DNA from: Macrostomum lignano
Lineage: Eukaryota
DNA length: 64,000 nucleotides
Assembly: GCA_002269645.1 (NCBI GenBank)
Contig: NIVC01002064.1
Coordinates: forward strand, 144,133 to 208,132
Reading direction: 5' to 3'
Position 1 is the stretch's first letter, and the number at the start of each line of letters is the position of its first letter. Shown here in pieces: positions 10,091 to 64,000 of this stretch. The notes under the pieces were generated by a model, which saw only the letters and a list, made by a program, of their open reading frames with translations, did no database searches and had not been told where the DNA came from. Both the position numbers and the translations under genes were made by a program.

Positions 10091-10489
<399 letters not shown>

Positions 10490-11208: not shown

Positions 11209-11404
11209 ATAAATAGGTGATATGTTGGGAATTCAATTGCAAAAAATGCATTTCGCAGCGTCTAGGGAATTCGCACGCACGATTTGCCAGTGTAGCGATC
11301 TTCTGCTTCAGTTGACCGAGTTCTCAGACAAAACTCTTGATCACGTCGAGATGTTGCTTACAAAGTCCCACAGTTAATACACAAAACAATTTGCACAGAC
11401 TCAC

Positions 11405-11819: not shown

Positions 11820-11890
11820 TGAAAGACATCGCTTCCGGGTGCTTCCCTCTTTGCTGTGGGATTTTCTTAATGGTCTTTATGGAACTAGCC

Positions 11891-26958: not shown

Positions 26959-27032
26959 CTCAATACTCAGGCTCCGGTGTTACATTTCCAGGTCTGGTTC
27001 AAAGTCCAGCCTCGGTGTAGGGGTTCAAGATG

Positions 27033-43582: not shown

Positions 43583-44368
43583 AGCTCATTCCATATAAGA
43601 TGGACATATTTGGAAAATAGAAAAAAGTCAATATTTTTGCTTGCCATTGCCTAATTAGCCTATTTTTTTACCAAATGTTTATATTGTGCAATATATACAA
43701 TCTAAGAATAAAGGAATGGTAAAATGTTGGATTAGTATGTTATCAATTGGAAAAAAGTCATTTTTGTAAAAATTTGGACATTTTTCGAAGCAAAAGACAT
43801 CATTAAGATTTTGTACCTTTTAAAAACAAATAGAAAGCTTTTGAAGGTTGAAACAAACTATAGATAAAAGTATAGTACTTGCATCATCAGGTAAAAGCAT
43901 TGGTGACCAAATAATCTATTATATTTTTAATGTATTAGTACCTCAAAGTTACTGAATTGACAGAAAAAAAAATGTTACGACCATAATGTTACGACCATAA
44001 GGCTGCCTTTTCTTTTGTATCTTTGTTGCCTTTTGAGTTTATATATTCTAATAAAAGAGTATTATTTCTAAAGATGTTCTTAGTCAAATTTTAAAAATGT
44101 ATTGCAAAATATTAAAAATGAAAAATGTTATAAGACTTTTACCTTTTAGTTTCTATATGTCAAAAATCCTGTCGTTACGACCATAAGTGTCATTTAAGGT
44201 TTAATAGCATCTATACTAATGATGATATCTATATGAAACTCTATAAATATATTCTAGACAAAATAATCTTTCATTTAAAATATAGGTTTAGTATATTCTA
44301 TTATTAGATTTCATTTTATAAGTAAAAATAACCTGTCATGTTACGACCATGCTTATATGGAATGAGCC
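43583..44368. mobile_element. Non-autonomous TIR DNA transposon (786 bp) with a 4-bp AAAT target duplication, Sola1-like
   Basis: Termini AGCTCATTCCATATAAG and CTTATATGGAATGAGCC (16-bp perfect inverted match). AAAT at 43579-43582 and 44369-44372. Four GTTACGACCAT motifs at 43974, 43988, 44174 and 44340. Confidence 0.65.
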
Positions 44369-46725
44369 AAATGCAGAGGAGGGGGCTTTGCTTGCTAGAG
44401 CCCCCCATTGACCCTAGAAAAGCTGTTTTTGTAGGTGCACAAACCCCTAAAAAGTAATTAAAAATGTCTATATTGGTTGAGTGGTTTTGAAGTCTATGAC
44501 CATAGCAAGTAAAATTGAAAATAGATACAAAGATAGAGTTTTGATTTTTATAGTTAGAGATTAGGTCTAGCTATTTTTATTTTTAATATTTCTAAAATAT
44601 GTCTATTAAAAATTTTGGCCTAGTCTAAGGCCTAATACTATGTTTTATACTAATTAAGACAATTGAAAATAATATTATCTTGCAAATTTAAAGTTGGGCC
44701 CTAGGCCTATTCTATGGTATAAGCAGATAAGTAGGTTAGATTATTAAATTAATAGAAATCAATTTGGCCTAGCCCTAGGGCCTAATGTTGCCCATTTCTA
44801 AATATCTTTCTTTAGCTATTCTTTTGAATTAGAGTTAGAAAAAAAAGTTTTTGTTTTCTATTATTAAAATTTTCAGTTCTATACTAGTAAGTAAGCTTTA
44901 GGCCTACCATTATTTTTTAGTATAAATATTACTTGGTAGGCCTAAATTACAAAATAAATAAAGAAGCAAAAAGCCAAAAATTTATAGTTTATGAAGGCAA
45001 AAATGGAAAAGGCAAAAAGGTATTGCAAAGCAAAAAAGAGAACCCTATTGAAGCAAGGTCTAAAAAATACTAGAAATCCTTTTTCTTTTATTAGATATCT
45101 AGATTACTTTGATATATTGCAGCTTAACATAGCCTTTTTTGCTTTCCCATATTGCCTTAGCTCCCTTACCTTTTATTCCTTATATGCAACTTTTTTATTC
45201 CCTTTGCATTTCATTGCTACATTACCACTAAGCTATTTTATATTAGATATTATCCATAAAATGGCCATTGTTTACAATAAGAAAAGAGAATAAAAAATAA
45301 AACAAGTTGCATAGCCAATATAGTTTCAGAGTTTATGCATTTGTTTATATATATATATTTAGTAAACCAAAATAGAGTAGACAATAGGCCTAATCAAAAC
45401 CTAAAAAGAACTAAAAAGATAAGTTTTTATATTTTCTGACATAATAATTCTATAGTAGTATATGTATAATCTTATTTGTTATTTGCTAGTTTCATTTTAG
45501 TGATTTTATCCATCATGGACATGGATATCCTAAATATATAAAATTTTGATGATAGGAAATAATTTATATCTTTTAAGCATTGATTTGGGCATCTGCTTCA
45601 AAAACAAATTAAATAGAAAGGTTGCCATGACATATTTATAATTATATAATTATAATTTATATAATATAGTATCATTTATTGTTTTAGTAGAAAATAGCAA
45701 TCAGCCCCCATTTATAAGGCAACAAATAAAGTAGCAGAATAATATCAAAAATATTTATAAAAATGCTAATATAGTTGTTTTCTTAAATTTTAGTGTGTAA
45801 AAATAAATCTTAAAATTAAGCATTTATAGTAACCTTTCAATTATCAACAATAAACAAAATCTATTTGCCTTGGCATTTCCAAGCTTATCTGTTAGAAAAG
45901 CAATTTTTAATTCTATTAGTTTATTTTGAAGAATATTTTATATATAAGTGAGCCTTTTATATAAGCATTTTTTATCTAAATTCAAGGTGCCAAATTAATA
46001 ACCAGAATGAAATTTAGCATCAATCAAAAAGTCAAATTAAATAGCATATCAAAATCTTTACTTATACTTTTTACATTGCTGCACCTCTCTAAACTACAGA
46101 AGTTGCAAAAGTTTGCAGATTCCTTATTTATAGATATATATTATTCAAATTTTACAATCAGTAGAAATCTCGAAATCCAAATGCTTATTGATACTTCAAA
46201 TAATATATAAATAGGTTACTATAAGCTACTAAATAAGTATGGAACTTGGATTAACAGTAAAACTACCAAGAGGGGTATTAATGTTTTGCTGCACCAGAAC
46301 AGAGCAATATAAGTACATTAAATTCAAGAACATTGTCTGACACAGGCGTCAAGGTGATGATATAATGCTTGAAAGACTCGCTAAGGATGTTAAGCAGTTG
46401 AGGTTTGCCCATTATTAAAGCTTGGTCAGCAAAATCAAGTAAATTAGCAAAGTGGTGTCCGTAATCATCTAGTAGCATCTGTTGAAAGTTCCAACAGCAT
46501 TGAGATGATGACAGAATGCTTGAAAGACTAGCTGATGATGTCTAGCAGTTGAAGTTTGCTATAGGGTGTCCATAGCGAACTTTAATAACACAATAGGGTG
46601 TCCATAGTCACCTGATGTTACATGTTGAAGGTCTAGAAGCTGCGCTTGGGTGAAGGCCAGTGATCAAATTCCAGACACATTTGTCGATGTGATGATGAGA
46701 TTTGGACTGGAGGCTTGGCAAAATA

Positions 46726-48025
46726 CGAGGGTCAGTCAAAAAGTAATGATAATTTTGTTGTACCGCCTAAAATATCAGAGTTATTGAACTGCAACTGGTT
46801 TCATTTGAAAAAAACATCTTTTGATCTTTATTTGACAGAGTTTTGGTTCTTCTAAAGTGATTGATGCTTGCATGGTGACACTCTAATCACAGTATATCCT
46901 TTAAGCAATGGAAAATTCAAAAATCGAAGCTCATACTAACGTGAAATTTCTTGTATAGCTTGGTTGGAAGCCAGCCGAAATCATTGACGCTTTGAAGAAG
47001 GTCTATGGGGACATTGCTCCACTAGATCCAACCATTTACTGCTGGATTCAGGCTTTTAAGGAAGGCCGAGAGTCCACGGAAGACGCCCAGCGGTCGGGAA
47101 GGCCCACAACATCGCGCACAGGGGAAAATGTGGTAGCTGTGCAGCCAGTGATTGAGCTGGATCGGCGCGTGACCATAGACAATATTGCTGAAAAAGTGGG
47201 CATTGCTCATGGCAGTGCTCACTCCATTGTGATGGACTATCTTGGTCTGAGCAAGCTGAGTGCTTGCTGGGTCCCGCGGCTGTTGCGGCCTGAACACCGG
47301 GTTCAATGCACTGAGTGCGCCATCAACCTGCTGAACCGCTTGGACGCTGATTCAGAAAACAGTTACCAGCGCTTAGTGACCGGGGATGAAACATGAATAT
47401 TTCAATGCAATCCCGAGTCCAAGGTCCAATCCAAGGAGTGGCTGCCACGAGATTCAGCAGGCCCCAAGAAGTTCCATTCGGAATGGTCTGCAGCGAAGGT
47501 CTTGGCGACAATTCTCTGGGATGTTGAGGGAGTGGTGACGGTGGACTTCTTGGAAAGCCAGAAGACCATCAATGCCACCTATTATGAGTCGCTTCTGTAA
47601 AAGCTCCGCACCGAACTGGCCAAAAAGCAACATGGCAAGTTGCACCTTGGGATTCTCTTTCACCACGACAAAGCACCAGCTCACACTTCTCGGCTCTGCC
47701 ATGAAGCCCTGCGAGATTTCTGCTGGGAAATCCTCCAGCATCTTCCATATAGCCCTGGTTTGGCTCTTTCGGACTTTTTTTGCTTCCCAAGCTGAAGGAA
47801 GCAATCAAAGGAGTCCAAGATGAGGACAAAGAGGCTGCCAAAAAGGCTACTGTACAGTGGCTTGCATCACAGCCTCCTGAGTTCTACGCAAACGGCCTGG
47901 AGAGATGGCGACACTGCATGGAGAAGTGCCTGACCCTGGAGGGGGACTATGTTGAAAAGTAGATTTCCATTTAAAGTTTGAGACTCGTGAGAACAAAATT
48001 ATCATTACTTTTTGACTGACCCTCG
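46726..48025 (+). mobile_element. Mariner (DD34D) DNA transposon, full length (1300 bp), transposase inactivated
   Basis: Perfect 34-bp TIRs CGAGGGTCAGTCAAAAAGTAATGATAATTTTGTT (46726-46759 and 47992-48025) with TA on both flanks. Transposase 46908-47962 with TGDET, HHDKA, YSPGLALSDF (34 residues between D2 and D3); stops at 46956, 47394 and 47598 and a frameshift near 47778. Confidence 0.96.
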
Positions 48026-48235
48026 TACACTAGTGCTTATTGAAAAAATCTGGCCTTCTGGCAGAATTTTTTCCATATCTCGATGGTCTGGAGGGCGCTG
48101 GCGACAAGAATTTCATCCATGTTCTTGCATTTTGTGTGCCTGCGTTGTAAGTTCTGGTACCAGCTACAAATCGTACCTTTCATACCTAGGTGTATTATTT
48201 CAAAACTGCTGTTAATATTTCAGACAACAACGGTT

Positions 48236-51200
48236 ATGTCAGCAACCCCGGCGCCGTCAGGTATCGAGCAGCAACTTGTTGACCGATTGCGCGCCACAGT
48301 GCAATCTTATTTATCCAGAATGCAATACAAATCTGCCGCATTCTGGGCCGATAAGCTTGTTAGTTTAAGCCGTGGCCAACCGAAAGATGTGTACAACTAT
48401 TGCCAGTGCTTGTACTTGACTAAGCAGTATCATCGGGCTATTCACCACCTGAAGCAGCGCCAATTGCACGTTCGCACAGTGGCTGGCTGCCATCTGACCG
48501 CACTGTGCCACTATGATAGTGGCGAATTCAATGACGCCTTGGCGGTGCTAGACAGTGCGGCCGCTGGTAATGGCGGCACGGCTGCTGACACTGGCGGCTT
48601 CAATGCCAGCCAATGGTTAGCCAGCGCTAGTCGGGTCCTTGACGATGATAATTTGACAGCATCAACCGAATGGCAACAGCTGCCACAGTTGGACGAATTC
48701 GGTCTGCCATGCCGTCCGCTTGCCGGTTCGCTGGCTCTGCTACGAGGTCGCGTGTTCGAATCTCTGGGCGTGAGGCCACGCGCAGTTCACTGCTTTGTAG
48801 ACGCCCTGCGCAAAGATGCCTATTGCTACGAAGCATTCGAAGCGCTATTCGGTTCGCAGAATTTGCGCGCATCCGAGGAGGCCGAACTATTAGCAAATTT
48901 GCATTTTGATGAGGCCTGCCAGACTCCCGAGGAGGCTAAGCTACTGCAGCTGGTGTACGGCAATCGGGTTAATAAGTACGGCCCACCAAAGGAGCTGGAA
49001 GTGCCGGACTCGATTGTGGCGCTGAAGGTGAGCTCGCTCAATTGAAAGCAGGTTTGGCCTGGGGTCGATGTACACCCTGTGTGAGCGTGTGTATGAGTGG
49101 GTGTACGTGCAGAGTGGCCGTCAGCACTCATTGTAGGACAATGTCACCGAATGCGTTGGCGCCAAGATGCCCACAATCTTCACGCAAATACTATTATCAT
49201 TATTGTTAGTTGGCAGGAGGCAGACAGCGGCCCTGACTTTTTCATCCATACTGAAAAGGTGTGGATTTTAGTGCACACTGAAATAAATTGGCCATCTCAC
49301 GGATTAAGGCCCTGACTAGTCATAGTCATAGCGTTTTTTGTTGTTGTTTTCTGAGGTAAAAAATAGCACCTCAACGCCCTGTGCCTTGGTGATTGTGAAT
49401 GGGGAGTTGGTGCGCATAATTGCACAAATTGATAAAAAAAACTTTTTATACCATCCCTAATCTCATTCAGGACAATGGCGACCTGGTAACTAGCCTGGCT
49501 GAGCGCTACTTCTACGCGTGCCACTTCCACGAATGCCAACAATTAACATCGAGCGTATTGGCCAACGATCCGTTTAACGATCTCTGCCTACCATTGCACA
49601 TCGCCGCTTTGAAAGAATTAGGCAAAGATAATCAATTGTTTTTGCTCGGGCATCAACTAGTTGAATTATATCCGTCTAGGCCTATTTCTTGGTACGCTGT
49701 TGGCTGTTATTATCTGTGCATACACGACAAGGAGATGGCTAGACGGTGAGTTTAAATATTTCATTCTTTCTACTACCAGTAGACGCAGTGTGTGCGACTT
49801 TCTCGGTCTCAGTCTAGACGCGTACATTAGAACATAGTTGAAACGCGCGGCAGCCCATCCGCTGAGAATATAGGATCAATACTTGGTTTTGAGTGCTTAA
49901 ATGTCTATGACACTCGTGCAGTCGTGACCGAGACATTTAAGCACTCCTATATCCTATATTCTCAGCGGATGGGCTGCCGCGCGTTTCAACTATCTTCTAA
50001 AGTCCAAGTTTAGAATACCAAAGTTCAAAACTAGGATGCCAGATGGGATTAGTCAGAATTGTTTTTTTTAATTTTAGTTCACTCTAGTTGCGACTTAGTT
50101 CACTCTAGTTGCGAATTAGTTCACTCTAGTTGCGACTTAGTTCACTCTATTTGCGACTTAGTTCACTTTAGTTGCGAATTAGTTCACTCTCGCTGCGACT
50201 TAGTTCACTCTATTTGCGACTTAGTTCACTCTAGTTGCGACTTAGTTCACTCTATTGCGACTTAGTTCACTCTAGTTGCGAGTTAGTTCACTTTAGTTGC
50301 GAATTAGTTCACTCTAGTTGCGACTTAGTTCACTCTATTTGCGACTTAGTTCACTCTAGTTGCGACTTAGTTCACTCTATTTGCGACTTAGTTCACTCTA
50401 GTTGCGAGTTAGTTCACTTTAGTTGCGAATTAGTTCACTCTAGTTGCGACTTAGTTCACTCTAGTTGCGAATTAGTTCACTCTAGTTGCGAATTAGTTCA
50501 CTCTAGTCGCGAATTAGTTCACTCTAGTTGCGACTTAGTTCACTCTAGTTGCGACTTAGTTCACTCTAGTTGCGAATTAGTTCACTTCAGCTACAATCCG
50601 CCCACGCATTGTAGCTACTTGATGAAGTGCACCAGAATGAATCGCTACTTCGGGCCTGGTTGGATCGCTCTTGGCCACGCTCTAGCTGAGGACACTGAGC
50701 ACGATCAGGCCATAGCTGCTTACACCACGGCTATACAGGCTATGCAGGGCAGTCACGTGCCCTACTTGTACATCGGCTTAGAGTACGGCCTCACAAATAA
50801 TCTACCATTGGCTAGCGAATTCTTTGATCAAGCTGTTGAACTGTGCCCGAACGATCCATTCTTATTGCACGAGCGCGGAGTTACGTATTTCAATGCGCGC
50901 GACTATGCCAAGGCTGAGGAGCAATTCCGGCTGGCTGTTGGCCGGATCGATGAACTGTCCGGCGAAATGCCCAGCTCATTCTGGGAGCCCGTGTTTAATA
51001 ATCTCGGGCACACCTGCCGGAAATTGAAGAGGTTTGCTTTTTGTACTTTAAATTAGTAGCAATAATAGTATAAACTAGCACCTTGTAAGTCACTTTTTAA
51101 TCGTTAAGTAAAATTGTTCAAGCAAAAAAGTATGGGCCTGAAAGCCAGCTGTCTAGCTTAAGATATCAGATCCCTTATGAGCTTTGGCTCAATGCATTTG

Positions 51201-51696
51201 AGCACCCCCATGAGTCGCAGGATTTCAGCTATCCCCCCATCTCAGCAATTTCCCATGAGCACGAAGAACCGTGTCTCACATAGTTGGACAGTTTAATACA
51301 ACTGGTCGTATTGAGAATCTTGCCTCGAGGAGGTGTCAAACGGAGGTCTTTCAGCGATGCTATGATGGAGAGCATTTGTATTTGTAAAGATGAAGCAAGG
51401 GCTCATCTTGACGTTTCTGGGATGTCGGTCGGCTATAGATGTCGGACGCTTTCTGCCGCCAAATTCACCCTTTATCGGATCCTGCAGAATCAGCACTGAA
51501 AGCGGCAGTGAAACAAAATTTAGGCCATATAATGTGAAGTCGCTGACAGAAACTTGGCTCAAGCAGCTACCCATGTTAGTGCTCAAGCGAGATGTAGAGG
51601 TCTCGATGAATGCCATCACTCAGCAGAAATGCATTCAGCGGGTGAACCATATTTAAACATGCATCTAGAGGTGTCTGACTGAATCACAACCAACTG

Positions 51697-51743
<47 letters not shown>

Positions 51744-52369
51744 TCTCCTATACCATAAGTAAACCCTCTCCTATAACATACCATAACTACCATAAGTAGT
51801 AGCTATAGTATTCTGATCAGTAAAACGTATAGAATCAACCGGATAGTTTGTAAGCAGGATATTATTACTGCTATTGTTCTCAATACCACAGATACGATGA
51901 GGCCATCCAGCACCACCAGCGAGCCTGGTCCCTGTATCCCGGCAACGCAGCCACCCTGACAGCTCTTGGCTACGCGTTCGCTTTAAACGGCGATTTCGAT
52001 CGAGCCGTTGATCACCTGACCCGGTCGCTTAGTTTAAACTATGACGATAAATTTAGTTCGCAATTGCTCAGCAAACTGGTTGAAGTGATGGCGGAGACTC
52101 ACCTGCCCTGGTTAGACTCTCTACTAGGCGATCGGGGCGACAGTTTGCCAACCATGAACTGGCAAGACCTGCCCGACCGGAAACCGGCGTCGTTGGCTAT
52201 GGAATCTCCTAGCGGCGCCTCGCTGTCCGGTCGGTGGCTGCAGTCGGCTACCACACAGACGCCGAATTCTGCTATGCGACTGCGGCAGCAGCAGCAGCAG
52301 CGTCAGCTGACCATGTCGGCTGGCAGCGTGGAAAGTGTCGATATGGAGGACGTTTCTATGGATATTTGA
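48236..52369 (+). CDS. CDC16: Anaphase-promoting complex subunit 6 / cell division cycle protein 16 (TPR protein), ~653 aa
   Basis: Exons 48236-49027, 49471-49745, 50615-51031, 51892-52369; phases 0,2,2; total 1962 nt. Motifs YKSAAFWADKLVSLS, QYHRAIH, ALRKDAYCYEAFEAL, LFLLGHQLVELYP..ISWYAVGCYY, FGPGWIALGH....EHDQAIAAY, WEPVFNNLGHTCRKLK.YDEAI. Confidence 0.96.
49830..49997. mobile_element. Hairpin MITE flanked by TA in CDC16 intron 2
   Basis: Outer arms 49827-49876 and 49951-50000 (50 bp, one mismatch); inner arms GAGTGCTTAAATGTCT 49891-49906 and 49931-49946 (perfect). Confidence 0.75.
50071..50587. repeat. 21-bp minisatellite (TTAGTTCACTCTAGTTGCGA[C/A]) in CDC16 intron 2
   Basis: Direct reading. 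Confidence 0.95.
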
Positions 52370-52572
52370 TTATATTGTTATATTTTGCTGCGGCAATCTT
52401 AGTACAGTGGGAATTCAACAGTCTTGCAGACTCAGTTAGTTACATATGATAAGGTCACTCTCTATTCTCCGCCAGTGTCGATACGTGTGGCTACTTTTTA
52501 TGACAGTAGTAGAATTTGCATGTGTAAAGAAAAAAATTGTAGGGAATTTAGGGAATTTCTGCCTTTTGTTTT

Positions 52573-52658
52573 AGGCAGAGGCTGTGTGCACTCTGGTGCA
52601 CTTTAAGCGACATTGTCACACAACCGGCGAGAGGCATCCCTGCCCATTCCGCCGACTC
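52573..52658 (-). mobile_element. SINE family B, short 3'-end fragment downstream of CDC16
   Basis: GGCTGTGTGCACTCTGGTGCACTTTAAGCGACATTGTCACACAACCGGCGAGAGGCAT..TGCCCATTCCGCCGACTC closely matches 29328-29407. Confidence 0.7.
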
Positions 52659-52671
52659 ATCTTGTATCTTG

Positions 52672-53148
<477 letters not shown>

Positions 53149-53780
53149 TATCTTCTTGTGTCGTGACTCAGTGCTGTGTCTCCAGAATGTTCGTTTAACC
53201 AGTTTATTTTCCGCTGGGAAAGATCTTGAAGAAGAAGAAGCCAGTCTTGTCCTTAAATGTTCTGGTGCAGCTAAATGTTTTTAAAAGGTATTAATTCTGT
53301 TACAGTGCTACTTTTATTAAGTAGTGCAACCACCGTGCTGATAATCTAGTAATCTGCATGCTTATTGATAAACTGTGGGTCATAAGGCATTTTCTATTCT
53401 CCATATATTTGGAGACAATTTTTTTTCCAAATAATTGCATTGTGTAATATTTTTGCAACTTGTAACGCTGTCTGACTCTTACAAAAATTACGAATAGAAA
53501 TAATACAAATAACTTTGACTATAATTGCTATGTGTATTTTATTATAAATCTGTAGTTCAACATTCTTTGTGTTTTTATTTTGTTTATTCAAATTCTAAGT
53601 GCTTAGTGTCATAGATGTCTTTGGGGTTCCTTTTAGCTACTTGCAGTAGTGTTGATAGTTTTGTTTTCAGCAGAAAAATTCAGTGAAACCTCCACAGTTT
53701 TATCCTCGGGGCAGTAAAATATCAGAAATCGAAGCCAGGTTTTTCTATCACGTTATTTTTATTAACATCGCAGACCCTTC

Positions 53781-53810
53781 TACTAACAGTAGTGCTGTCG
53801 CCAAATTTAG
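53781..53810 (+). promoter_or_regulatory. Branchpoint TACTAAC plus 3' splice acceptor (cis- or trans-splice site) in front of the glutaredoxin-like gene
   Basis: TACTAAC at 53781-53787; acceptor CCAAATTTAG ends at 53810. Confidence 0.6.
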
Positions 53811-54212
53811 ATTTTCAGCAGACTAATTTCAAGCGTTAGTAGCGGCGGCGGCGGCGCTGCTCGGTTTGCCCAGCTACTATCGGTCAGCAGCAGTCGCTCC
53901 TTTGCCACCAGTTCCAAGCCGAATCAGAGTTCGCCAGAACTGCCAGCAGTGCTAACAATGTATACTCGGCCGGGTTGCACTCTGTGCGAAGATGCGGTTG
54001 AAGAGGTTCAACATTTGATCGACGCTGGTCGGATTGTACTGCGTCGGGTTGACATCGACTTGCCAGAGAATGAGCGGTATCAGGTGTGGCGCTACGATAT
54101 ACCCGTGTTTAAAATTCGCGGCCTGCCAACTATGATGCATCAATTAGACTTGGACGCTTTGACCCGGCATTTGAATCAGTTGGAGCTTGCGGAGAGGAGC
54201 AAAACTGATTAA
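53811..54212 (+). CDS. C5orf63: Glutaredoxin-like protein (C5orf63/DUF836 type, CTLC motif) with a predicted mitochondrial presequence; no in-frame genomic ATG before the domain
   Basis: LPAVLTMYTRPGCTLCEDA...VDIDLPEN...WRYDIPVF...MMHQLD matches the family pattern. Frame is open back to the TAG at 53808-53810, giving IFSRLISSVSSGGGGAARFAQLLSVSSSRSFATSSK. Confidence 0.88.
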   Translation: MFSRLISSVSSGGGGAARFAQLLSVSSSRSFATSSKPNQSSPELPAVLTMYTRPGCTLCEDAVEEVQHLIDAGRIVLRRVDIDLPENERYQVWRYDIPVFKIRGLPTMMHQLDLDALTRHLNQLELAERSKTD

Positions 54213-54248
54213 TTGGTGAGCTTTTTACTTTTGTATGCGTACGTCTAT

Positions 54249-54808
54249 GAGTTAAGGATCGGGTAGGATTTATGAGTGAAGGATCGGGTAGGATTTATGA
54301 GTGAAGGATCGGGTAGGATTTATGAGTGAAGGATCGGGTAGGATTTATGAGTGAAGGATCGGTAGGATTTATGAGTGAAGGATCGGTGGTGTTCATAGGT
54401 GAGGGATCAGAGGGTAGGGATTAGGGAAGGGTTTATGGGTAAAGAATCGGAGGGTAGGGATTAGGGAAGGGTTCATGGATAAAGAATCGGAGGGTAGGGA
54501 TTAGGGAAGGGTTCATGGGTGACGGATCGGAGGGTAGGGATTAGGGAAGGGTTCGTGGTGACGGATCGGAGGGTAGGGATTAGGGAAGGGTTCGTGGTGA
54601 CGGATCGGAGGGTAGGGATTAGGAAGGGTTCGTGGGTGACGGATCGGAGGGTAGGGAAGGGTTTATGGGTGACGGATCGGAGGGTAGGGAAAGGTTTATG
54701 GGTGACGGATCGGAGGGTAGGGAAAGGTTTATGGTGACGGATCGGAGGGTAGGGAAGGGTTTATGGGTGACGGATCGGAGGGTAGGGAAAGGTTTATGGG
54801 TGACGGGT
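54249..54808. repeat. G-rich minisatellites (25-bp units, then ~33-40-bp units containing GGGTAGGGATTAGGGAAGGG)
   Basis: Direct reading. Confidence 0.92.
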
Positions 54809-55613
54809 ATTCATTCATGCAGCCTTTGACTCCTATTGTGCTAGTCAGTTATTCCAGCCCTTTACTGTCAAGTATGAACAGGTGAAAGTGCAGGACAGAC
54901 GAAGGACAGTCCAAGTGTATTAATTGTACTTTTGTTTTAGTGCACAATGCTTATTGGCTACTCGAAATTGCCTTCTTTATCTGTCAGTGTCAAATTCTTT
55001 AAATTCGAAGTGCTAAGCTACAAAACAAAATTACATTTAACGTCACCTTATTGAACATTTTTCTACTGTATATGCATATTTGTGTCTTAACACTCAGATT
55101 CGAGCAATATAATTATCAGTTTCTGCCGTTACGTTCAACAACTTCTCTCCGCTTGGTAATGCTTTTCTATATTGTTTGATTTACTCTCTGAGTCTCCGTA
55201 CCTCACAATATCTCTCTCTCCTCTCCCCCTCTCTCTTCTCTCAGTTTTGTTCTCAGTATGCAAGAGCCAAACTGCAGCAAACTAACATTTATGCCCTAGG
55301 ACATACCTCAATTTTTGTACACTGCTCTCATTTCCAAGAAAACTCCGTGACTGAGAATGACATTGTGTTGTACTTGCTGAATACGCGTCTGAAATTTTTT
55401 TTACGCAGATAGCCTAGTTCAAGTACACAGTCTGTAGAGCTGCTGTGGGTCTGTTTCCTGTTACGGATGTACTTGCGCTCCTATGTACACGCGCTCTGTG
55501 TATATATGTTTCATATCGAGAGACCGCCGCAGCTTTTATTATTGAATAGTAGCCGTGAAAAATGGCCATCGGCAAGCAGTGAAATATTTAAAAAAAGCTT
55601 TATCTATTTGAAA

Positions 55614-56019
55614 ATGTTTAATAAAAGTGGCGATGAAAACAATAATGATGATGAAGATTTCCACGCCGAATCGCCGAGTCAGCTTCGTCCTCGAGGCGGC
55701 GGCCTCGGCCGCATTGTACATTGATTGGCTCGAATCGGTGCTGCGATCGCATCGACAGATGGTTGCTGAGCCAGTTGGACTCGGCTTACCTGCCAGATCT
55801 AGTCTGGCTGGACAGGGCTAGCGGCCTGTTTCGCATCGATTGGCATCGGCGGCAGTGTGACAGGCGGCGGCTGCGGCCGTGACTGCGGAGGACACGGCTG
55901 TGGAACTGCTGCTGCCGCTGCTGCTGAGGACTGCGGCAGCGGCCGTGGTAGCGTATTCACTGCCTGGCACCGGTATCGAGGTGACTGCCTGTCTGTCCGT
56001 CTGGCTGTCTGCCTGTCTC

Positions 56020-56065
<46 letters not shown>

Positions 56066-56191
56066 CCTCTGTCTGTCTGTCCGTGTGTCTATCTGTCCGT
56101 CTGTCTTTCTATCTGTCTGTCTGTCTGTCTTAGTGTCTGTCTGTCTGTCTGTGTGACTCTGTCTGTCTGTCTGTCTGTCTGTCTGTGTGAC

Positions 56192-56222
<31 letters not shown>

Positions 56223-56951
56223 TAGTGTCTGTCTGTCTGCCCCTTTTCTTATATGCCTGTCTGCACTGCCTATCTGTCTGTCCCGTTAGTTAGTCTGTCT
56301 GTCGTGCCTTTGCGCATCTGTCTGTTTGTTAGTATGTATATCATCATATCTCTTATTCTTCTTTGTCTTGTAATACCTTGCAGTTTTGTCTAATACATTC
56401 AATTTCCTTATCAATCGATTAATAGGTAAAAATACTTTGCTAAGCGGACTCCAGCAGAGTAGTTCCGTATCAATTTTATATATTGTACTAAAGTACATTT
56501 ATAACTTCAGCATATCTGTAGCACATTGTTGCCCTCTTACTAAATTCGCAGGCCGCGACAGCCCGGCTGAATGGCGCCGACTTAAACAAAATTTTCGCTG
56601 CGCCCTAAACGGCAGCCGGCGCTATCTGCGCTATCGGCGCGACCTAAGCCGGCGCGGGGGCGCCAACGCCTACCGAGTCTACCAGTTCGTTGCTAACGAC
56701 GCCAACAGTCGCGTCGCCGTTTTGTCTACGCCAGCTACTAGTGTTGCTAGCACCCCACAGATGCCAGCTTTGACATTGCGGCCAATGAAAACTATGACCA
56801 ATTCGATTGTAAACCCGTTGCCAAGCATACTGTTGACATTGACAACGAAATTATCATTGATTGGCTGATCGACAAGTCGCCGCTGGTGTCCAGCATTGAT
56901 CCGTGCATGCATTCCAGCGGCAGCGCCTTGGCTGGCTTGCTGCAATCCTGA
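55614..56951 (+). CDS. IRF: Interferon regulatory factor (IRF)-family transcription factor, DNA-binding domain plus short acidic tail; reading frame interrupted by indels (sequence error or pseudogene)
   Basis: [33 protein letters not shown] (W at 55760, 55805, 55841; spacing 15 and 12 as in IRFs), [10 protein letters not shown] (W 55965), intron 55981-56551 (GTGACT...TACTAAATTCGCAG, phase 1), [19 protein letters not shown]...AYRVYQF. Start ATG 55614 and stop 56951 require frameshifts. Confidence 0.82.
55988..56300. repeat. (TCTG)n tract in the IRF intron
   Basis: Direct reading. Confidence 0.9.
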
Positions 56952-57320
56952 TCACTTCAAATAACTGTGGCTTGCTTTGTTTGATTGTATTCCATTTCAT
57001 TTTAATTTTTGTCTACTCAGTACAGTATTAATGGTGTATAGATATGTTATCATATTCCCATGGATATGTTATCGCTTATCGGACATCAATGATTAGCATG
57101 ACTTGATTCTAAATATATGTTATCAAAATTTAAATTATTTCACACGTTTGTCTATTTACTTACCGTTGTTAAAGGCCTTTTAGTTATTTTTTCAACATTT
57201 GGGTTGCTATCTAATTACCAGTTAGAAGAATAAGAATAAAGGTAAGTAATTTTAGATCAGGACGGATTATTTTACGACCTTTGGGATTTTAAGTGTAATA
57301 ATAATTTATAGATCAACAGG

Positions 57321-57738
57321 TTGAGCCACCCTCCCAGGTTGCTGGGCCACCCTCCCAGATCCTCAGTTTCTGGGCCAGTCTCCCAGATCCTCAGTTACTG
57401 GGCCAGCCTCCCAGATCCTAAGTTGCTGGGCCACCCTCCCAGATCCTCAGTTGCTGGGCCAGCCTCTCAGATCCTAAGTTGTTGGGCCAGCCTCTCAGAT
57501 CCTCAGTTGTCGGGCCACAGCCTCCCAGATCCTCAGTTGCTAGGCCAGCCTCCCAAATCCTCAGTTGTAGGCCAGCCTCCCAGATCCTCAGTTGCTGGGC
57601 CACCCTCCAGATCCTCAGTTGCCGGCCACCCTCCCAGATCCTCAGTTGCCGGGCCACAGCCTTCCAGATCCTCAGTTGTCGGGCCACAGCCTCCCAGATC
57701 CTCAGTTGCCAGGCCAGCCTCCCAGATCCTCGGTTGCT
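57321..57738. repeat. 28-bp minisatellite (CCTCCCAGATCCTCAGTTGCTGGGCCAG) upstream of NUP155
   Basis: Direct reading; same family as 61067-62272. Confidence 0.93.
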
Positions 57739-58024
57739 GAACCACTGCTACGCTCAAAGATCCTTAATAGCTTTGCTACCCTCCTAGATCCGTAGGCTAC
57801 CTTGGTACCCTCAAAAATCCTCATTTTATGGCATCCCATATCTTCAATTTGAGTGTCCAAATCCCTAAATTCTACCCTTTGTGTCGCTATCCCAGATTCC
57901 TAATACAGGAGAGGCAGAACGGATATCCTGTACAGTTGCCCCAACAATAAATATGCCAGATTTAGTACATTTTTGCCAGCTAAAGCCCATAGCGTCGCGC
58001 TAATTTCATGTCAGTCCTAACAAA

Positions 58025-61000
58025 ATGGTAAATGGACCGCCGTCAGTCGCCATCATGCAACAGCATCAGCAGCAGACTCCGCCATCAAGCGGCATTGCTA
58101 TTGGCAGCTGCGGAATCGCCGCTACCCCGTCGGCCGCAGCGTCCGGCGTTGCAGCGTCCGGCGCGCCAGGCGGCGACCTGATCGAGGAGGGCCTGCAATT
58201 CCTGGAGCCGTTCGTCCAATCGGAGCGCAGCTACCCGGATCTGGCCACCCTGCTAGGCGGCGTGGGCGATCGGGTGACCATGAGCGGCACCGACGTGGCG
58301 GCCTATCCGCCTAGTCCGAATGGCTCAGGCGGCGAAGTGTCGATCTCGCGCGTCACTCCGCTGCCAGGCGAACTAATGGAGAAACTGGGCGCTATGCAGA
58401 CCAACTGCCTCATGGGCGTGTTCCCGGAGGCTAGCCGGGCCTGGCTGACTGTTGATAACGAATTCTTCTTGTGGAACTACGAGGACGGCAGCGATTTAGC
58501 TTATTATGACGGGCTTCAAGACGCTATTGTTGCTGTTGGATTTGTACAGCCTAGGCGAGATGTGTTTGCAGACGAGGTGCACCATCTGTTGTGCCTGGCT
58601 ACGCCTTTAGAATTAGCTGTGCTAGGCGTTAGTTATCAGTCTGGCCAGGTGCACCTGCTGGCCGAACCGCTGTTGCGCCTGCCAACTGATGGACAGGTTG
58701 TCACCTGTATTGAAGGCAGCCGATCGACTGGCCGGCTGTTCGCTGGCACCCAGTCTGGCTGCCTGCTCGAGGTGGCGTATGAGGAGCGCCGAGTTGGATG
58801 GCTTAGCGGCCAGTACACGGTGGGTGGGGATCTGGGTGTGGAAAATATAGAGGTGTTAAATGATAAGACACAATATACAGAGTTACTTAACTAACTGACT
58901 GACTGACTGACTGACTGACTGACTGACTGACTGACTGACTGACTGACTGACTGACTGACTGACTGACTGACTGACTGACTGACTGACTGACTGACTGACT
59001 GACTGACTGACTGACTGACTGACTGACTGACTGACTGACTGACTGACTGACTGACTGACTGACTGACTGACTGACTGACTGACTGACTGACTGACTGACT
59101 GACTGACTGACTGACTGACTGACTGACTGACTGACTGACTGACTGACTGACTGACTGACTGACTGACTGATGACTGACTGACTGACTGACTGACTGACTG
59201 ACTGACTGACTGACTGACTGACTGACTGACTGACTGACTGACTGACTGACTGACTGACTGACTGACTGACTGACTGACTGACTGACTGACTGACTGACTG
59301 ACTGACTGACTGACTGACTGACTGACTGACTGACTGACTGACTGACTGACTGACTGACTGACTGACTGACTGACTGACTGACTGACTGACTGACTGACTG
59401 ACTGACTGACTGACTGAGTTAAAAACTAAAAACTAACTTGATAGTATTGCTACTTAAAGCAGTACATAAGTACATTAAAGATAATTGTTACACTCGCATC
59501 TTTTCAGGTACAGGGCCGCTTAATCAATCACAGCGTGTCCAGCCTCTCCCGCCTAGTGCCCAGCTTCATCAGTAGTTTAGCGGCAGCCGACGATCCAATA
59601 TGCCAGGTGTGCGTAGACGACAGCAGACGATTAGTGTACACCAGATCGCAGGAGTCGACCGTGTTTGCCTATGCCTTGTCTGCCGAGGCTGGCGATACGG
59701 CGGCCAGGCGGGTGGCGGCCTTGCGCGGCTCAGACCTGGCCGCTCATGCTGCCCGCATTGCTCACATGGTCGATCGCAGCTGTCTAACCGATATTGTACA
59801 CCTGTCGCCGCTGACTGCTCAGCATTCCGCTATGCTCTATCTTATGGCCGTCACCGGGTCCGGGGTTCGATTCTATTTCGATGCTCGCCTACGCCTGGCT
59901 CACGTTCGGCTAGGCCCGATGTGTCCGAGTCTGCCTAGGCTGGCCGATATTCGGCTGGCCACGGAGAGCCGCGGTACGGTCCTGATGCTGGCCAGTCGAG
60001 GGGAGGATCGGGACACACTCTATGTGCTCAGTCCGGACCCGTTTCCTAGGAGACCGCAGCTGCAGGTGCGCCTGGGGCTTTTCTATGTACTATTGCGTTT
60101 CATTGCGTGTACTTTTATGGTTTCAGAGTGTACTTTATGTGCTTCAGTGTAGCGCCAGTCCAGCCACTTACAATGCTTCAGTGTAGCGCCAGTCTCTAGT
60201 ATCCATTGTACTGTATGCTTCAGTATAGCGCCAGTCCAGCCACTTTCCAATGCTTCAGTGTGGCGCCAGTCCAGCCACTTTCCAATGCTTCAGTGTGTCG
60301 CCAGTCTTACTTACCAATGCTTCAGTGTGGCGCCAGTCCAGCCACTTTCCAATGCTTCAGTGTGGCGCCAGTCCAGCCACTTACTAATGCTTCAGTGTGG
60401 CGCCAGTCCAGCCACTTACCAATGCTTCAGTGTGGCGCCAGTCCAGCCACTCTCCAATGTTTCAGTGTGACGCCAGTCTTACTTACCAATGCTTCAGTGT
60501 GACGCCAATCCAACGGCACTGTATTTCAGATGGGTTCCACCTAATTAGCCGTACACACTTTAACTTAATTAACTTAGCCATGCAATAGTAAATTAAATAT
60601 TCTCCTTCATTTTCCCCTTTATTCAGGAGGCCTGCAGCGTGGCCTGGCCCCTGGCCGTGCCTGGATCATGTGCTGCCTGCCCAGCCCGCAGCTGATTATC
60701 GGGACATCGGCATCGATCCCCAGCTGCACGACGGTCCCCTAGTTGGCAGGCCGTATCCTCCTGTGTTTCTGACTCAACACGTTGATCCGGTCAGGCGGTT
60801 TCTATTAGTATCAGTGCACGGCCTTGTGCTGCTGGAATTGCAGACTCCGCTAATGCGTCTGGCCGGTTTGTTAGCGGCCAATCAGCCGGATTCTCGTCCG
60901 GTGACAGATTGGTTTGCCCACTTTGGCCCCGAGGAGAGCAGCTGCGTCTGTCTGATCCTAGCCTGCTGCGATAGCGACGATCTAGTTAGGGAGAGAGCGC

Positions 61001-63828
61001 TGGCCGCCGTCATGCTGCATGGCACTGCCGCGGCTGTTAGAGATGGTTGGTACTTTTATTTTGAGTCTCCTCAGTTGCTGGGCCAGCCTCCCAGATCCTC
61101 AGTTGCTGGGCCAGCCTCCCAGATCCTCAGTTGCTGGCTAGCCTCCCAGATCCTCAGTTGCTGGGCCATCCTCCCAGATCCTCAGTTGCTAGGCCACTAT
61201 CCCAGATCCTCACCAGCTGCCCGCATCCTCAGTTGCTGGGCCACCACCACCCTCCAGATCCTCACCTGCTGCCCAGATCATCAGTTGCTGAGCCAGCCTC
61301 CCAGATACTCAGTTGCTAAGCTAGCCCTCCCAGATCCTCAGTTGCTGGGCCAGCCTCCCAGATCCTCAGTTGCTAGGCCAGCCTCCCAGATCCTCAGTTG
61401 CTGGGCCAGCCTCCCAGATCCTCAGTTGCTGGGCCAGCCTCCCAGATCCTCAGTTGCTGAGCCACCTGCCAGTCCCAGATCCTCAGTTGCTAGGCCAGCC
61501 TCCCAGATCCTCAGTTGCTGGGAGCCAGCCTCCCAGATCCTCAGTTGCTGGCCAGCCTCCCAGATCCTCAGTTGCTAGGCCAGCCTCCCGCATCCTCAGT
61601 TGCTGGCCACCACCACCCTCACAGATCCTCAGTTGCTGGGCCAACCTCCCAGATCCTCAGTTGCTGGGCCAGCCTCCCAGATCCTCAGTTGCTAGGCCAG
61701 CCTCCAGATCCTCAGTTGCTGGGCCAGCCTCCGCAGATCCTCAGTTGCTGGTCCAGCCTCCCAGATCCTCAGTTGCTAGGCCAGCCTCCCGCATCCTCAG
61801 TTGCTGGGCCACCACCACCCTCACAGATCCTCAGTTGCTAGGCCAGCCTCCCAGATCCTCAGTTGCTGGCCAGCCTCCCAGATCCTCAGTTGCTGAGCCA
61901 CCTGCCAGCCTCCCAGATCCTCAGTTGCTGGGCCAGCCTCCCAGATCCTCAGTTGCTGGGCCAGCCTCCCAGATCCTCAGTTGCTGGCCAGCCTCCCAGA
62001 TCCTCAGTTGCTGAGCCACCTGCCAGCCTCAGATCCTCAGTTGCTAGGTCAGCCTCCCAGATCCTCAGTTGCTGGGCCAGCCTCCCAGATCCTCAGTTGC
62101 TAGGCCAGCCTCCCAGATCCTCAGTTGCTAGGCCAGCCTCCCGCATCCTCAGTTGCTAGACCAGCCTCCCAGATCCTCAGTTGCTGGCCACCACACCACC
62201 CTCACAAATCCTCAGTTGCTGGCCACCACCACCTCACAAATCCTCAGTTGCTGGGCCACCACCCCCTCACAGATCTTTATTTCTGTAGGCAACCCATTCT
62301 GGCCCATCGGCAGTTTATAAATACATGAAATGCCATCAAATTTCAAGCATAATTAATTTACACCATCTTCGCACCCATCGCAGCCGCCATGGCCGCCTCA
62401 ATCGATTGCCAGACGCCGGTTCCATCAAGCGCCGCGGCAGCCGACCCGTCGGCCAATGCCCTGCTGTCCGGCCTGTCCCGCTACGCCGCCAGAGTCCTGC
62501 TGCCTCTCTGGTACAGCCCGATCGTGTCTGAACGGCGCGGCTGCTTCTTAGTCAGCCGATTAGAATCCGACGAGCTTGGCTGGTTCTCGTCTCATCTGAC
62601 TCACCTGTTCAGATTTGTGCAATCCAATCTAAGCCCAGCTAAGCGCTTCGGCTAGGGGCCGCGTTGAAGCTGAGAGTCAACAGCGGGCCTACAAATTGTT
62701 GCAATTGATTTCTACTAATTTGGAACTGTTGAACCTGTGGAAACTGCTGGCTGAGCATCAGTTCTATCTTGTGGCAGGTTTGTACTGATTCAAATTGCAC
62801 ATTACCCTTGTGTACTTTATACTGCACATTACCCCTTGTTCCATACTTTATACTACCCATTACCCCTTGTCCCATACTTATACTGCACATTACCCCCTTG
62901 TTCATACTTTATACTGCACATTACCTTTGTCCCATACTTTATACTGCCATTACCCCTTGTTCCATACTTTATACTGCACATTACCCCTTGTCCCATACTT
63001 TATACTGCACATTACCCCTTGTTCCATACTTTATACTGCACATTACCCCTTGTCCCATACTTTATACTGCACATTACCCCTTGTTCCATACTTTATACTG
63101 CACATTACCCCTTGTCCCATACTTTATACTGCACATTACCCCTTGTTCCATACTTTATACTGCACATTACCCTTTGTCCATACTTTATACTGCACATTAC
63201 CCTTGTCCCATACTTTATACTCCACATTACCCCTTGTTCCATACTTTATACTGCACATTACCCTTTGTCCCATACTTTATACTGCACATTACCCCTTGTT
63301 CCATACTTTATACTGCACATTACCCATTGTGTCCCATGCTCTGCACTATTGTCACAGAAATTTCAAGCCTCAAGAACCTCCCCGACCACAATCGATTGTT
63401 TTACAGACGCCTGACAGAAGACGAGCGCGCACACGCTTCGTGGAACGCGTTTCGAGACCTACTTCTGGCTAAGAATCGCCTACTGCTCAATCGTTTAATC
63501 GCCTGTCTGCTTGAGCACTACCTGGCCGACAGCGCCAGCGTTGACAGCATCTCTAACAAGCTGCAGGAGGCCTGCTCATCGCTCTATACTCCGCAGGATG
63601 CCCTGTGTGCCAAGGCTAACGAAATGCTGCAAGCGCTGCCGGCGAGCCGCTCGACCGTCGGACCAGCCTGTTGGCCGAGGCCGGCCGGCTGTACAGGGAG
63701 GCCGGCACCTCCGTCAGCCTGGCCGATGTGCTGCCCCGGCTAGAGGCTCTGCAGGCCTACGAGACTATGGCCGGATTGTGCCTGGCCTTGGCCAAGCAGT
63801 GGGATCCTCAGGTGCGCGTCTGTGTGTG

Positions 63829-63864
<36 letters not shown>

Positions 63865-64000
63865 CTGTCTGTCTGTCTGTCTGTCTGTGTCAGTCAGTCC
63901 GCCCGCTTCGCATTAGCATTCCTACCCTTGCCGCCCCGCCCACCAGGATCGCGCTCTGCACTTCACACGCGAAGGCCGGAAGCCGCACACGGAGGCGGAC
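58025..64000 (+). CDS. NUP155: Nuclear pore complex protein Nup155 (Nup170 family), 5' part, runs off window end; several apparent frameshifts
   Basis: Exons 58025-58819, 59508-60065, 60627-61045, 62384-62777, 63358 (or 63407)-63811, 63947 onward. Motifs SYPDL, [107 protein letters not shown]. Confidence 0.93.
58893..59416. repeat. (CTGA)n microsatellite in NUP155 intron 1
   Basis: Direct reading. Confidence 0.97.
60140..60505. repeat. 35-bp minisatellite (CAGTCCAGCCACTTTCCAATGCTTCAGTGTGGCGC) in NUP155 intron 2
   Basis: Direct reading. Confidence 0.92.
61067..62272. repeat. 28-bp minisatellite in NUP155 intron 3
   Basis: Direct reading. Confidence 0.95.
62805..63330. repeat. 31-bp minisatellite (CACATTACCCCTTGTTCCATACTTTATACTG) in NUP155 intron 4
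   Basis: Direct reading. Confidence 0.95.

What the first reader, a model, noticed from the sequence alone, without database searches (positions are those of the whole stretch)
55614..56951. Hidden IRF (interferon regulatory factor) gene, split across reading frames and not evident from the ORF track
Seen: a Trp-repeat DNA-binding domain across two exons, with W at 55760, 55805 and 55841 (spacing 15 and 12), FTAW at 55965, then [13 protein letters not shown] and YRVYQF after a phase-1 intron (55981-56551). Known: this Trp pentad plus the NFRCALN recognition helix defines the IRF family, which predates interferons and was lost in nematodes and insects. Atypical features: W3-W4 spacing is ~41 codons rather than ~20, because of a GGC/GCT-rich insert carrying a frameshift; three extra residues lie between W5 and KxNFRC; and no IAD/SMAD-like C-terminal domain is visible, only a short acidic tail ([16 protein letters not shown]...IDWLID, reached by a -1 shift at CCCC 56753-56756). 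Inference: a compact, divergent IRF in an interferon-less invertebrate, placed among housekeeping genes.
Basis: partly seen in the sequence, partly recalled or inferred. Interest (0 to 1): 0.82.

Follow-up and report, generated by a model that had tools for sequence, protein, structure and literature searches.

The report
Flatworm IRF gene, frames broken artificially
The window holds a real but unannotated, compact interferon-regulatory-factor-type gene of the flatworm Macrostomum lignano; its "split across reading frames" comes from base-dropping errors at the end of an assembly contig, because an overlapping contig of the same assembly encodes it intact.

Summary
Window 55614-56951 encodes an IRF DNA-binding domain (Pfam PF00605, 54-60 bits against a cut-off of 27; every PDB hit is an IRF). 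It has a phase-1 GT-AG intron at 55981-56551, a long W3-W4 insert, no IAD and an acidic tail.

The frame breaks are not biological. The window is the last 64 kb of GenBank contig NIVC01002064.1 (Macrostomum lignano, assembly Mlig_3_7). Contig NIVC01001123.1 overlaps window 44331-62336 with 0 substitutions and 53 indels. The window lacks bases at 34 sites after 54.3 kb, but at only 1 site in the 10 kb before that. All three IRF frameshifts are such sites: -G after 55692, -GC after 55879, -C in the C-run 56753-56. The overlapping contig encodes an intact 256-aa, two-exon protein.

No gene is called at this locus on any of the three contigs. Two UniProt models swallow fragments of it as chimeras. 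M. lignano already has annotated paralogous compact IRF-domain proteins, and flatworm IRFs have been known since 2007.

Verdict: a new, unannotated member of a known family, not a pseudogene. Expression and function are untested. Interest is low to moderate.

The parts
55614..55980 (+). IRF exon 1: start codon, acidic N-terminus, Arg-rich stretch, W1-W4 of the DNA-binding domain and a Cys/Gly/Ala-rich insert. In the window it is 367 nt. The true length is 370 nt.
   Evidence: The frame-2 piece hits Pfam IRF profile positions 2-36. On L003, 11275-11644 is one open frame from the ATG to the donor. The choice of ATG is inferred: in-frame ATGs also exist at 55467 and 55506.
55692..55693 (+). Assembly deletion 1. 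The window reads CCTC-GAGG, while both other contigs read CCTCGGAGG. This shifts the frame from 0 to 2.
   Evidence: Window against L001 and window against L003.
55879..55880 (+). Assembly deletion 2. The window reads GGCCG--TGAC, while both other contigs read GGCCGGCTGAC. This returns the frame from 2 to 0. With deletion 1 the net loss is 3 nt.
55981..56551 (+). Phase-1 GT-AG intron, 571 nt in the window, largely (CTGT)n microsatellite.
   Evidence: The same junction on L003 gives a continuous ORF.
56552..56951 (+). IRF exon 2: shifted W, recognition helix [12 protein letters not shown], beta-strand AYRVYQF, linker, acidic C-terminal tail and stop TGA 56949-51.
   Evidence: Pfam IRF profile positions 65-105. 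The tail is 100% identical over 65 aa to UniProt A0A1I8IG53, and in that protein it is in frame with the DBD.
56753..56756 (+). Assembly deletion 3. The C-run is C4 in the window and C5 in L001, in L003 and (inferred from its protein) in the ML2-assembly copy. This shifts the frame from 1 to 0 just before the tail.
56656..56660 (+). G5 run. It is correct in the window and in L003. The second copy, L001, has G4, which would truncate the DBD in that copy.
53958..54212 (+). Upstream neighbour: a single-exon glutaredoxin-like (DUF836) gene. It is not part of the IRF gene, although UniProt A0A1I8IG53 fuses the two.
   Evidence: The read-through ORF matches Pfam Glrx-like positions 4-76 of 77 at 43 bits, against positions 2-40 for the chimera.

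Best explanation
Window 55614-56951 is an intact, two-exon gene of Macrostomum lignano. It encodes a 256-aa IRF-family transcription factor.

Domain layout:
- acidic N-terminus
- Arg-rich, NLS-like stretch
- IRF winged helix-turn-helix DNA-binding domain
- short linker
- acidic, hydrophobic-studded C-terminal tail
- no IAD

The three frameshifts seen in the window are deletion errors of the long-read consensus near the end of contig NIVC01002064.1. They are not mutations.

Inferred mechanism: the recognition helix (NFRCALN, with the Arg, Cys and Asn that contact GAAA in IRF1) binds GAAA-core (ISRE/IRF-E-like) sites. The acidic tail serves as an activation domain. Regulation would then work through abundance or partners, as in the IRF1/2 type, not through phosphorylation-driven IAD dimerisation.

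What is shown: family membership, gene structure, and the artefactual nature of the frameshifts. What is inferred: expression, DNA specificity, activation function and any role in immunity.
For: IRF domain:
- Pfam PF00605 scores 54.2 bits on the stitched peptide and 55.9 bits on the intact protein.
- All PDB hits are IRF DBDs.
- In an alignment with five M. lignano paralogue DBDs and canonical IRFs, W1-W3, the F and the K..RCA of the recognition helix are invariant.

Artefact:
- L002 is 100% identical to window 38224-62369. This places the window at 144133-208132, the end of NIVC01002064.1.
- L003 (NIVC01001123.1, positions 1-18023) matches window 44331-62336 with 0 substitutions and 53 indels.
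- The window lacks bases at 34 sites from 54.3 kb onward, against 1 site in the preceding 10 kb. L003 lacks bases mostly in its own first 2 kb.
- The three IRF frameshift sites are all 'window lacks' sites. The independent copy L001 agrees with L003 at each of them.
- L003 encodes an intact 256-aa ORF with the same GT-AG intron.
- The same kind of deletions also fall within the Nup155 region of the window, for example 60647 -C. Nup155 is called on L003 and L001 but not on the window's contig.
- The assembly is Canu on PacBio reads with Pilon polishing (PMC5730564).

Functional family in this species: intact paralogous proteins are annotated, A0A1I8JBS5 and A0A1I8GTL5 (~265 aa, DBD plus acidic tail) and A0A1I8FU79.
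Against: - There is no transcript or read evidence. No gene is called at this locus even on the contig where the ORF is intact, so expression may be low, conditional or absent.
- The two copies differ too little in unique sequence (~2 substitutions per kb) for the 0 substitutions in 770 nt of exon to show purifying selection. About 1.5 substitutions would be expected.
- The copy L001 has a G4 run that breaks the DBD. I could not tell whether that is real.
- The canonical fifth Trp is replaced by Leu, and a ~20-residue Cys/Gly/Ala-rich insert sits between W3 and W4. DNA binding is therefore not guaranteed.
- A structure model of the paralogue was too poor to use (pLDDT 44).
- The start codon is not verified.
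Confidence: 0.78

Rival explanations
1. This copy is a true pseudogene. The three frameshifts would be real mutations in a redundant copy of a neopolyploid genome.
For: M. lignano is a recent polyploid with redundant gene copies (PMC10733133 abstract). No gene is called at the locus. The window's reading of the gene stops after 36 codons.
Against: The overlapping contig has 0 substitutions in 18 kb, so it is the same haplotype, yet it carries all the missing bases. Deletions in the window cluster in its last 10 kb whether the sequence is coding or not (34 against 1). They also fall within the Nup155 region. All the differences are deletions in the window.
Confidence: 0.03
2. The ORF is intact but the gene is silent or decaying in all copies. 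It would be a recently dead paralogue of the M. lignano IRF expansion, with no function.
For: The locus is unannotated on all three Mlig_3_7 contigs. L001 has a frameshifting G4 run. A low-complexity GC-rich insert sits inside the DBD, and the canonical W5 is lost. No selection signal is measurable.
Against: The 256-codon ORF, both splice sites and the start and stop codons are intact on L003. The DNA-contact residues of the recognition helix are retained. The tail is 100% identical in protein to a more divergent ML2 copy that differs elsewhere, SR against KE. W5-to-Leu is shared by the annotated paralogues, so it is a family trait and not decay.
Confidence: 0.17
3. The frame changes are decoded biologically, by programmed ribosomal frameshifting, RNA editing or an extra small intron. 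One candidate intron is GT 55855 to AG 55939, 85 nt in the window and 87 nt in the true sequence.
For: Removing 55855-55939 restores the frame in the window. It gives a single contiguous Pfam match at 59.9 bits, slightly above the 55.9-57.5 bits of the unspliced versions.
Against: The breaks vanish in the overlapping contig, so nothing needs decoding. The candidate intron is ~75% G+C and has no pyrimidine tract, unlike the gene's real intron and the several-hundred-nt introns of its neighbours. Splicing would leave only 13 residues between W3 and W4, against 20-25 in every relative.
Confidence: 0.02

Closest known systems
M. lignano 'IRF tryptophan pentad repeat domain-containing proteins' (UniProt A0A1I8JBS5, A0A1I8GTL5, A0A1I8I1F2, A0A1I8FU79), plus the two tandem IRF-like domains inside A0A1I8JFR9
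   Same: Same species and same compact layout: DBD plus acidic tail in ~195-267 aa, with no IAD. They share RID[KR]WL, Leu at the canonical W5 position and LKQ-x-[FL]RCAL-x-G. All but A0A1I8FU79 carry an aromatic residue three positions before the Leu. Pfam IRF scores are similar, 52-56 bits.
   Different: Only 29-31% identical. The window gene alone has the ~20-residue Cys/Gly/Ala-rich insert between W3 and W4 and the N-terminal acidic plus Arg-rich extension. It keeps Trp at W4, where some paralogues have Tyr. It is not annotated.
IRF1/IRF2 subfamily (vertebrate IRF1 and IRF2; short invertebrate 'IRF2-like' proteins such as Actinia tenebrosa XP_031554517, 256 aa)
   Same: N-terminal IRF DBD followed by a short, non-SMAD-like C-terminus. 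The recognition helix NFRCA-x-N is conserved. Lacking an IAD1 is normal for this subfamily (established knowledge).
   Different: 28-32% identity in the DBD. Canonical W5 is lost, the W3-W4 loop is longer, and no IRF1-type C-terminal motifs were detected. Subfamily assignment was not tested by phylogeny.
Schistosoma mansoni SmIRF (PMC2194728) and the planarian 'diverged IRF3/4 homolog' (PMC13563047)
   Same: IRF-family genes in Platyhelminthes. They show that the family is present in flatworms while absent from the nematodes and insects then sequenced.
   Different: SmIRF is 476 aa and is described with a SMAD/FHA-type C-terminal domain, with IRF4-like similarity over 434 aa. The window gene is 256 aa with no such domain (no Pfam hit).

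Membership tests
IRF family (Pfam PF00605 / SMART SM00348) | Significant match to the IRF DNA-binding-domain profile over its full length | tested here: met
   54.2-59.9 bits against a gathering cut-off of 27, covering profile positions 2-105 of 105. The top 20 PDB hits are all IRF1/2/3/4/7/10 DBDs. A profile search of 1.84 billion proteins returned 249 hits at E<=0.001; those I looked up were IRFs.
IRF family | Five spaced tryptophans (Trp pentad) at canonical positions | tested here: inconclusive
   W1, W2, W3 and W4 align with the canonical columns. The canonical W5 column holds Leu, and a Trp lies three residues upstream (W131). All M. lignano paralogues share the Leu. So four of five are canonical.
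IRF family | Recognition-helix residues that read GAAA (IRF1 Arg82, Cys83, Asn86; from established knowledge of the IRF1-DNA structure) | tested here: met
   NFRCALN aligns with NFRCAMN of IRF1 chain 1if1_A. R, C and A are invariant in the eight-sequence alignment.
IRF family | Winged helix-turn-helix fold of the DBD | not testable with these tools
   The intact protein could not be submitted for prediction. The paralogue model from a four-row alignment had pLDDT 44 and is unusable.
IRF family | Sequence-specific binding to ISRE/IRF-E (GAAA repeats) | not testable with these tools
   Needs EMSA, PBM or SELEX.
IRF3-9 type (IAD1-containing IRFs) | C-terminal SMAD/FHA-like IRF association domain (Pfam PF10401) | tested here: not met
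   No Pfam hit in the tail or in the whole 256-aa protein at E<=1. The stop codon lies 64 residues after the linker, and Nup155 starts ~1 kb downstream.
Processed or unitary pseudogene | Frame-disrupting mutations that are real in the genome | tested here: not met
   The overlapping same-haplotype contig and a second copy carry the bases missing from the window. The ORF is intact on L003.

The most novel reading that the evidence does not exclude
M. lignano carries a lineage-specific expansion of at least five compact IRF-like loci. In all of them the canonical fifth Trp is replaced by Leu, and in four an aromatic residue sits one helical turn earlier. The window gene is an undescribed member. 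Its unique insert, [18 protein letters not shown]...EDCGSG, holds four Cys and one His between W3 and W4. It could form a metal- or redox-sensitive loop next to the DNA-binding surface. That would give an IRF regulated in a way not seen in the family.
Probability: 0.06. Interest if true: 0.6.

Novelty: new member of a known kind. Interest (0 to 1): 0.22.

Why it matters
The result is mainly an annotation and quality-control finding.

- **Missing gene.** A real transcription-factor gene is absent from the GenBank annotation of Mlig_3_7. In UniProt it is represented only by fragments inside two chimeric models.
- **Unreliable contig ends.** Contig ends in this assembly carry about 4 deletions per kb, which mimic pseudogenes. 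Unmerged overlapping contigs can be used to detect and repair such errors.
- **Biology.** The gene adds a member to a small, divergent family of IAD-less IRF-like factors in a regeneration model whose innate-immune transcription factors are poorly known. A recent planarian study found no clear IRF3/NF-kB effectors downstream of TBK1 (PMC13563047). Macrostomum IRF-like genes are therefore reasonable candidates to test. None of this overturns what is known about IRF evolution.

Tried and rejected
- **Pseudogene test by indel rates.** I compared indel rates in the IRF exons with those in neighbouring exons, window against L001. IRF had 4 indels in 0.77 kb and the neighbours 7 frameshifting single-base indels in 5.8 kb. 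This looked suggestive, but L003 then showed that the window's deletions are contig-end errors.
- **Purifying selection.** The 0 substitutions in the IRF exons between copies are uninformative. Unique-sequence divergence is only ~2 per kb, so ~1.5 substitutions were expected.
- **Extra intron.** An 85/87-nt GT-AG intron at 55855-55939 would repair the frame, with a marginally higher Pfam score. I rejected it on its composition, on the resulting W3-W4 spacing, and because no repair is needed.
- **Fetching DNA for UniProt models.** P0001 and P0002 are not on record in the contig collection.
- **Paralogue structure model.** It was unusable, pLDDT 44, so I ran no fold search.
- **Literature.** I found no paper describing a Macrostomum IRF.

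Full report
**1. What is in the sequence**

The window is eukaryotic. Its long exons belong to several genes:
- phospholipase D, 27-41 kb, minus strand
- a CDC16/APC6-like TPR protein, 48.2-52.4 kb
- a glutaredoxin-like protein, 53.96-54.21 kb
- Nup155, from 58.0 kb

- An ATG at 55614 in frame 0, which runs into a stop after 36 codons.
- A frame-2 stretch, [32 protein letters not shown], with TGG at 55760, 55805 and 55841.
- A frame-0 stretch ending ...[12 protein letters not shown], at a GT donor (55981).
- An AG acceptor at 56550-51, giving a phase-1 junction.
- A frame-1 stretch, [46 protein letters not shown]...
- A frame-0 acidic tail, [16 protein letters not shown]...IDWLID...LLQS, ending at TGA 56949-51.

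The stitched peptide matches Pfam IRF (PF00605) at 54.2 bits, E=2e-14, against a cut-off of 27. Each half also hits on its own. All 20 sequence hits in the PDB are IRF DNA-binding domains, IRF1, 2, 3, 4, 7 and 10, with E down to 3e-10.

**2. Where the window comes from**

The only strong protein hit to the stitched peptide was UniProt A0A1I8IG53 of Macrostomum lignano, named 'Glutaredoxin-like protein'. A search with neighbouring exons returned M. lignano GenBank proteins, and these let me fetch three contigs of assembly GCA_002269645.1, Mlig_3_7:
- **L002** (NIVC01002064.1, 182356-206501) is 100% identical to window 38224-62369. The window is therefore positions 144133-208132 of that 208,132-nt contig, its last 64 kb.
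- **L003** (NIVC01001123.1, 1-18023) overlaps window 44331-62336.
- **L001** (NIVC01004124.1) is a second copy. It is ~98% identical overall and ~99.8% identical in unique sequence.

**3. The frameshifts are assembly errors**

L003 and the window differ by 0 substitutions and 53 indels over 18 kb. They are the same haplotype assembled twice, as an unmerged dovetail overlap of two contig ends. The indels are strongly polarised:
- The window lacks bases at 34 sites between 54.3 and 62.3 kb, about 4.2 per kb, but at only 1 site in the preceding 10 kb.
- L003 lacks bases mainly in its own first 2 kb (12 of its 18 sites).

Each contig is therefore degraded toward its own end.

The IRF gene lies inside the window's degraded zone. 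Its three frame breaks are exactly three 'window lacks' sites:
- a G after 55692 (CCTC-GAGG against CCTCGGAGG)
- GC after 55879 (GGCCG--TGAC against GGCCGGCTGAC)
- one C of the run 56753-56 (C4 against C5)

The independent copy L001 agrees with L003 at all three sites. The first two deletions sum to 3 nt. This explains why the frame goes 0, then 2, then back to 0.

On L003 the gene (11275-11644 plus 12217-12987) is an uninterrupted 256-codon ORF with the same GT-AG phase-1 intron. That protein scores 55.9 bits on Pfam IRF.

Deletions of the same kind fall within the Nup155 region of the window, for example 60647 -C. Nup155 is called as a gene on L003 and L001 but not on the window's contig. 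The published method explains residual indels where coverage is thin or reads map to several copies: Canu on PacBio reads, then Pilon polishing with Illumina and RNA-seq (PMC5730564).

My earlier comparison of indel rates between the IRF exons and neighbouring exons is superseded by this result.

**4. The other copies**

L001 has identical IRF exons apart from a G4 run where the window and L003 have G5 (window 56656-60). That would frameshift the DBD before AYRVYQF. I cannot tell whether it is real. The same contig also lacks single G or C bases in the N-terminal exons of phospholipase D.

The older ML2 assembly is represented by two chimeric UniProt models:
- **A0A1I8IG53** joins the glutaredoxin exon to IRF exon 2 through a false donor. 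The true glutaredoxin gene reads straight through that donor and matches Pfam Glrx-like positions 4-76 of 77. The model also implies an extra base in AAAATTTT (56588-95). In that copy, however, the acidic tail is in frame with RCALN...YRVYQF and is 100% identical over 65 aa.
- **A0A1I8FKE9** appears to join a garbled piece of IRF exon 2 to Nup155 (a weak match).

Every assembled copy is thus broken, or not broken, at a different place, and a simple composite of them is intact.

**5. What the gene encodes**

The 256-aa protein has these parts:
- acidic N-terminus, residues 1-24, pI 4.1
- Arg-rich stretch RPRRRRPRP, NLS-like (an inference)
- IRF DBD, roughly residues 46-171
- linker
- acidic tail, residues 193-256, pI 4.1, with 11 Asp/Glu and hydrophobic clusters ([13 protein letters not shown])

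Neither the tail nor the whole protein matches an IAD or any other Pfam family. Nup155 starts about 1 kb downstream, so there is no room for a missing domain.

I aligned it with five M. lignano paralogue DBDs and with canonical IRFs:
- W1-W3 and the K..RCA of the recognition helix are invariant.
- W4 is kept.
- The canonical W5 column holds Leu in all the M. lignano sequences. In the window gene a Trp sits three residues upstream; most paralogues have Tyr there.
- The W3-W4 spacing is 42 residues, against about 20-25 in the relatives. The extra length is a Cys/Gly/Ala-rich insert found only in this gene. The insert is in frame in the true sequence.

**6. Likely mechanism**

This section is inference. 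The gene probably encodes a sequence-specific transcription factor that reads GAAA-core sites. It would do so through NFRCALN; the Arg, Cys and Asn correspond to the DNA-reading residues of IRF1, from established knowledge of the IRF1-DNA structure and the alignment. The acidic tail would act as the activation domain.

Without an IAD, the protein cannot use the IRF3/7-type switch, in which phosphorylation drives dimerisation. It is functionally closer to IRF1/2-type factors, which are controlled by abundance or by partners. Expression, targets and any immune role are untested.

**7. Comparison with what is known**

- IRFs in flatworms are already published. SmIRF of Schistosoma mansoni is 476 aa, has a SMAD/FHA-type C-terminus, and was cloned in 2007. 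The same paper lists IRF among genes absent from the nematodes and insects then sequenced (PMC2194728).
- A diverged IRF3/4-like gene is mentioned for the planarian Schmidtea (PMC13563047).
- UniProt already labels several M. lignano proteins as IRF tryptophan-pentad proteins: A0A1I8JBS5, A0A1I8GTL5, A0A1I8I1F2 and A0A1I8FU79. Two more IRF-like domains sit inside the chimeric model A0A1I8JFR9.
- Short IAD-less IRFs are ordinary in invertebrates, for example the 256-aa 'IRF2-like' protein of Actinia.
- The window gene is only 29-31% identical to its nearest paralogue. No gene is called at its locus on any of the three contigs.

It is therefore a new, unannotated member of a known family.

**8. 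Verdict**

- The interpretation as a compact, divergent IRF is supported.
- The 'hidden, frame-split' character is an assembly artefact, and the pseudogene alternative is essentially excluded for this haplotype.
- Whether the gene is expressed remains open.
- Interest is low to moderate. Its value lies mainly in annotation and in flagging the unreliability of contig ends in this assembly.

Noticed in passing
window 54300-64000 (contig end); L003 1-2000: The window is the last 64 kb of NIVC01002064.1. It overlaps the start of NIVC01001123.1 by ~19.7 kb, with 0 substitutions, so this is an unmerged duplicate of one haplotype. Each contig drops bases toward its own end: ~4 per kb in the window's last 10 kb.
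   Followed up: yes
window 58025-64000 (Nup155): The Nup155 region in the window carries the same single-base deletions, for example 60647 -C. No Nup155 gene is called on this contig, although it is called on the two other contigs.
   Followed up: partly
window 53823-54212 and 56552-56951; UniProt A0A1I8IG53 and A0A1I8FKE9: Two UniProt M. lignano models are chimeras that contain pieces of the IRF gene: 'Glutaredoxin-like protein' (Grx exon plus IRF exon 2) and 'Nucleoporin_N domain-containing protein' (IRF exon 2 fragment plus Nup155). The true Grx-like gene is a single exon ending at 54212.
   Followed up: partly
L001 19609 (equivalent to window 56656-60); L001 1966, 2001, 2911: The second copy (NIVC01004124.1) has G4 instead of G5 in the IRF DBD, which is a frameshift. 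It also lacks single G or C bases in N-terminal exons of phospholipase D. I did not resolve whether these are real null alleles or residual consensus errors.
   Followed up: partly
proteins P0002-P0004, P0137, P0130 (not in the window): M. lignano has at least five compact IRF-like loci that share Leu at the canonical W5 position and an LKQxFRCALxG helix. Two of them lie in tandem inside a chimeric 'Phosphodiesterase' model (A0A1I8JFR9), and one copy is fused to a copia-type gag (A0A1I8I1F2).
   Followed up: partly
window 18043-19278 (+), 11358-11819 (-), 46992-47396 (+): Other content of the window: a WS/DGAT-type acyltransferase exon (an unusual family for an animal), the first exon of a rhodopsin-type GPCR, and a mariner-like HTH transposase fragment.
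   Followed up: no
window 1-470, 7587-10480, 13390-13880, 19280-21120, 26280-27090, 30660-31150, 32370-33090, 54240-54800, 57320-57740, 60900-63400: Mini- and microsatellite arrays are very dense. They produce long spurious ORFs in several frames, and they account for most of the apparent substitutions between the two copies.
   Followed up: no
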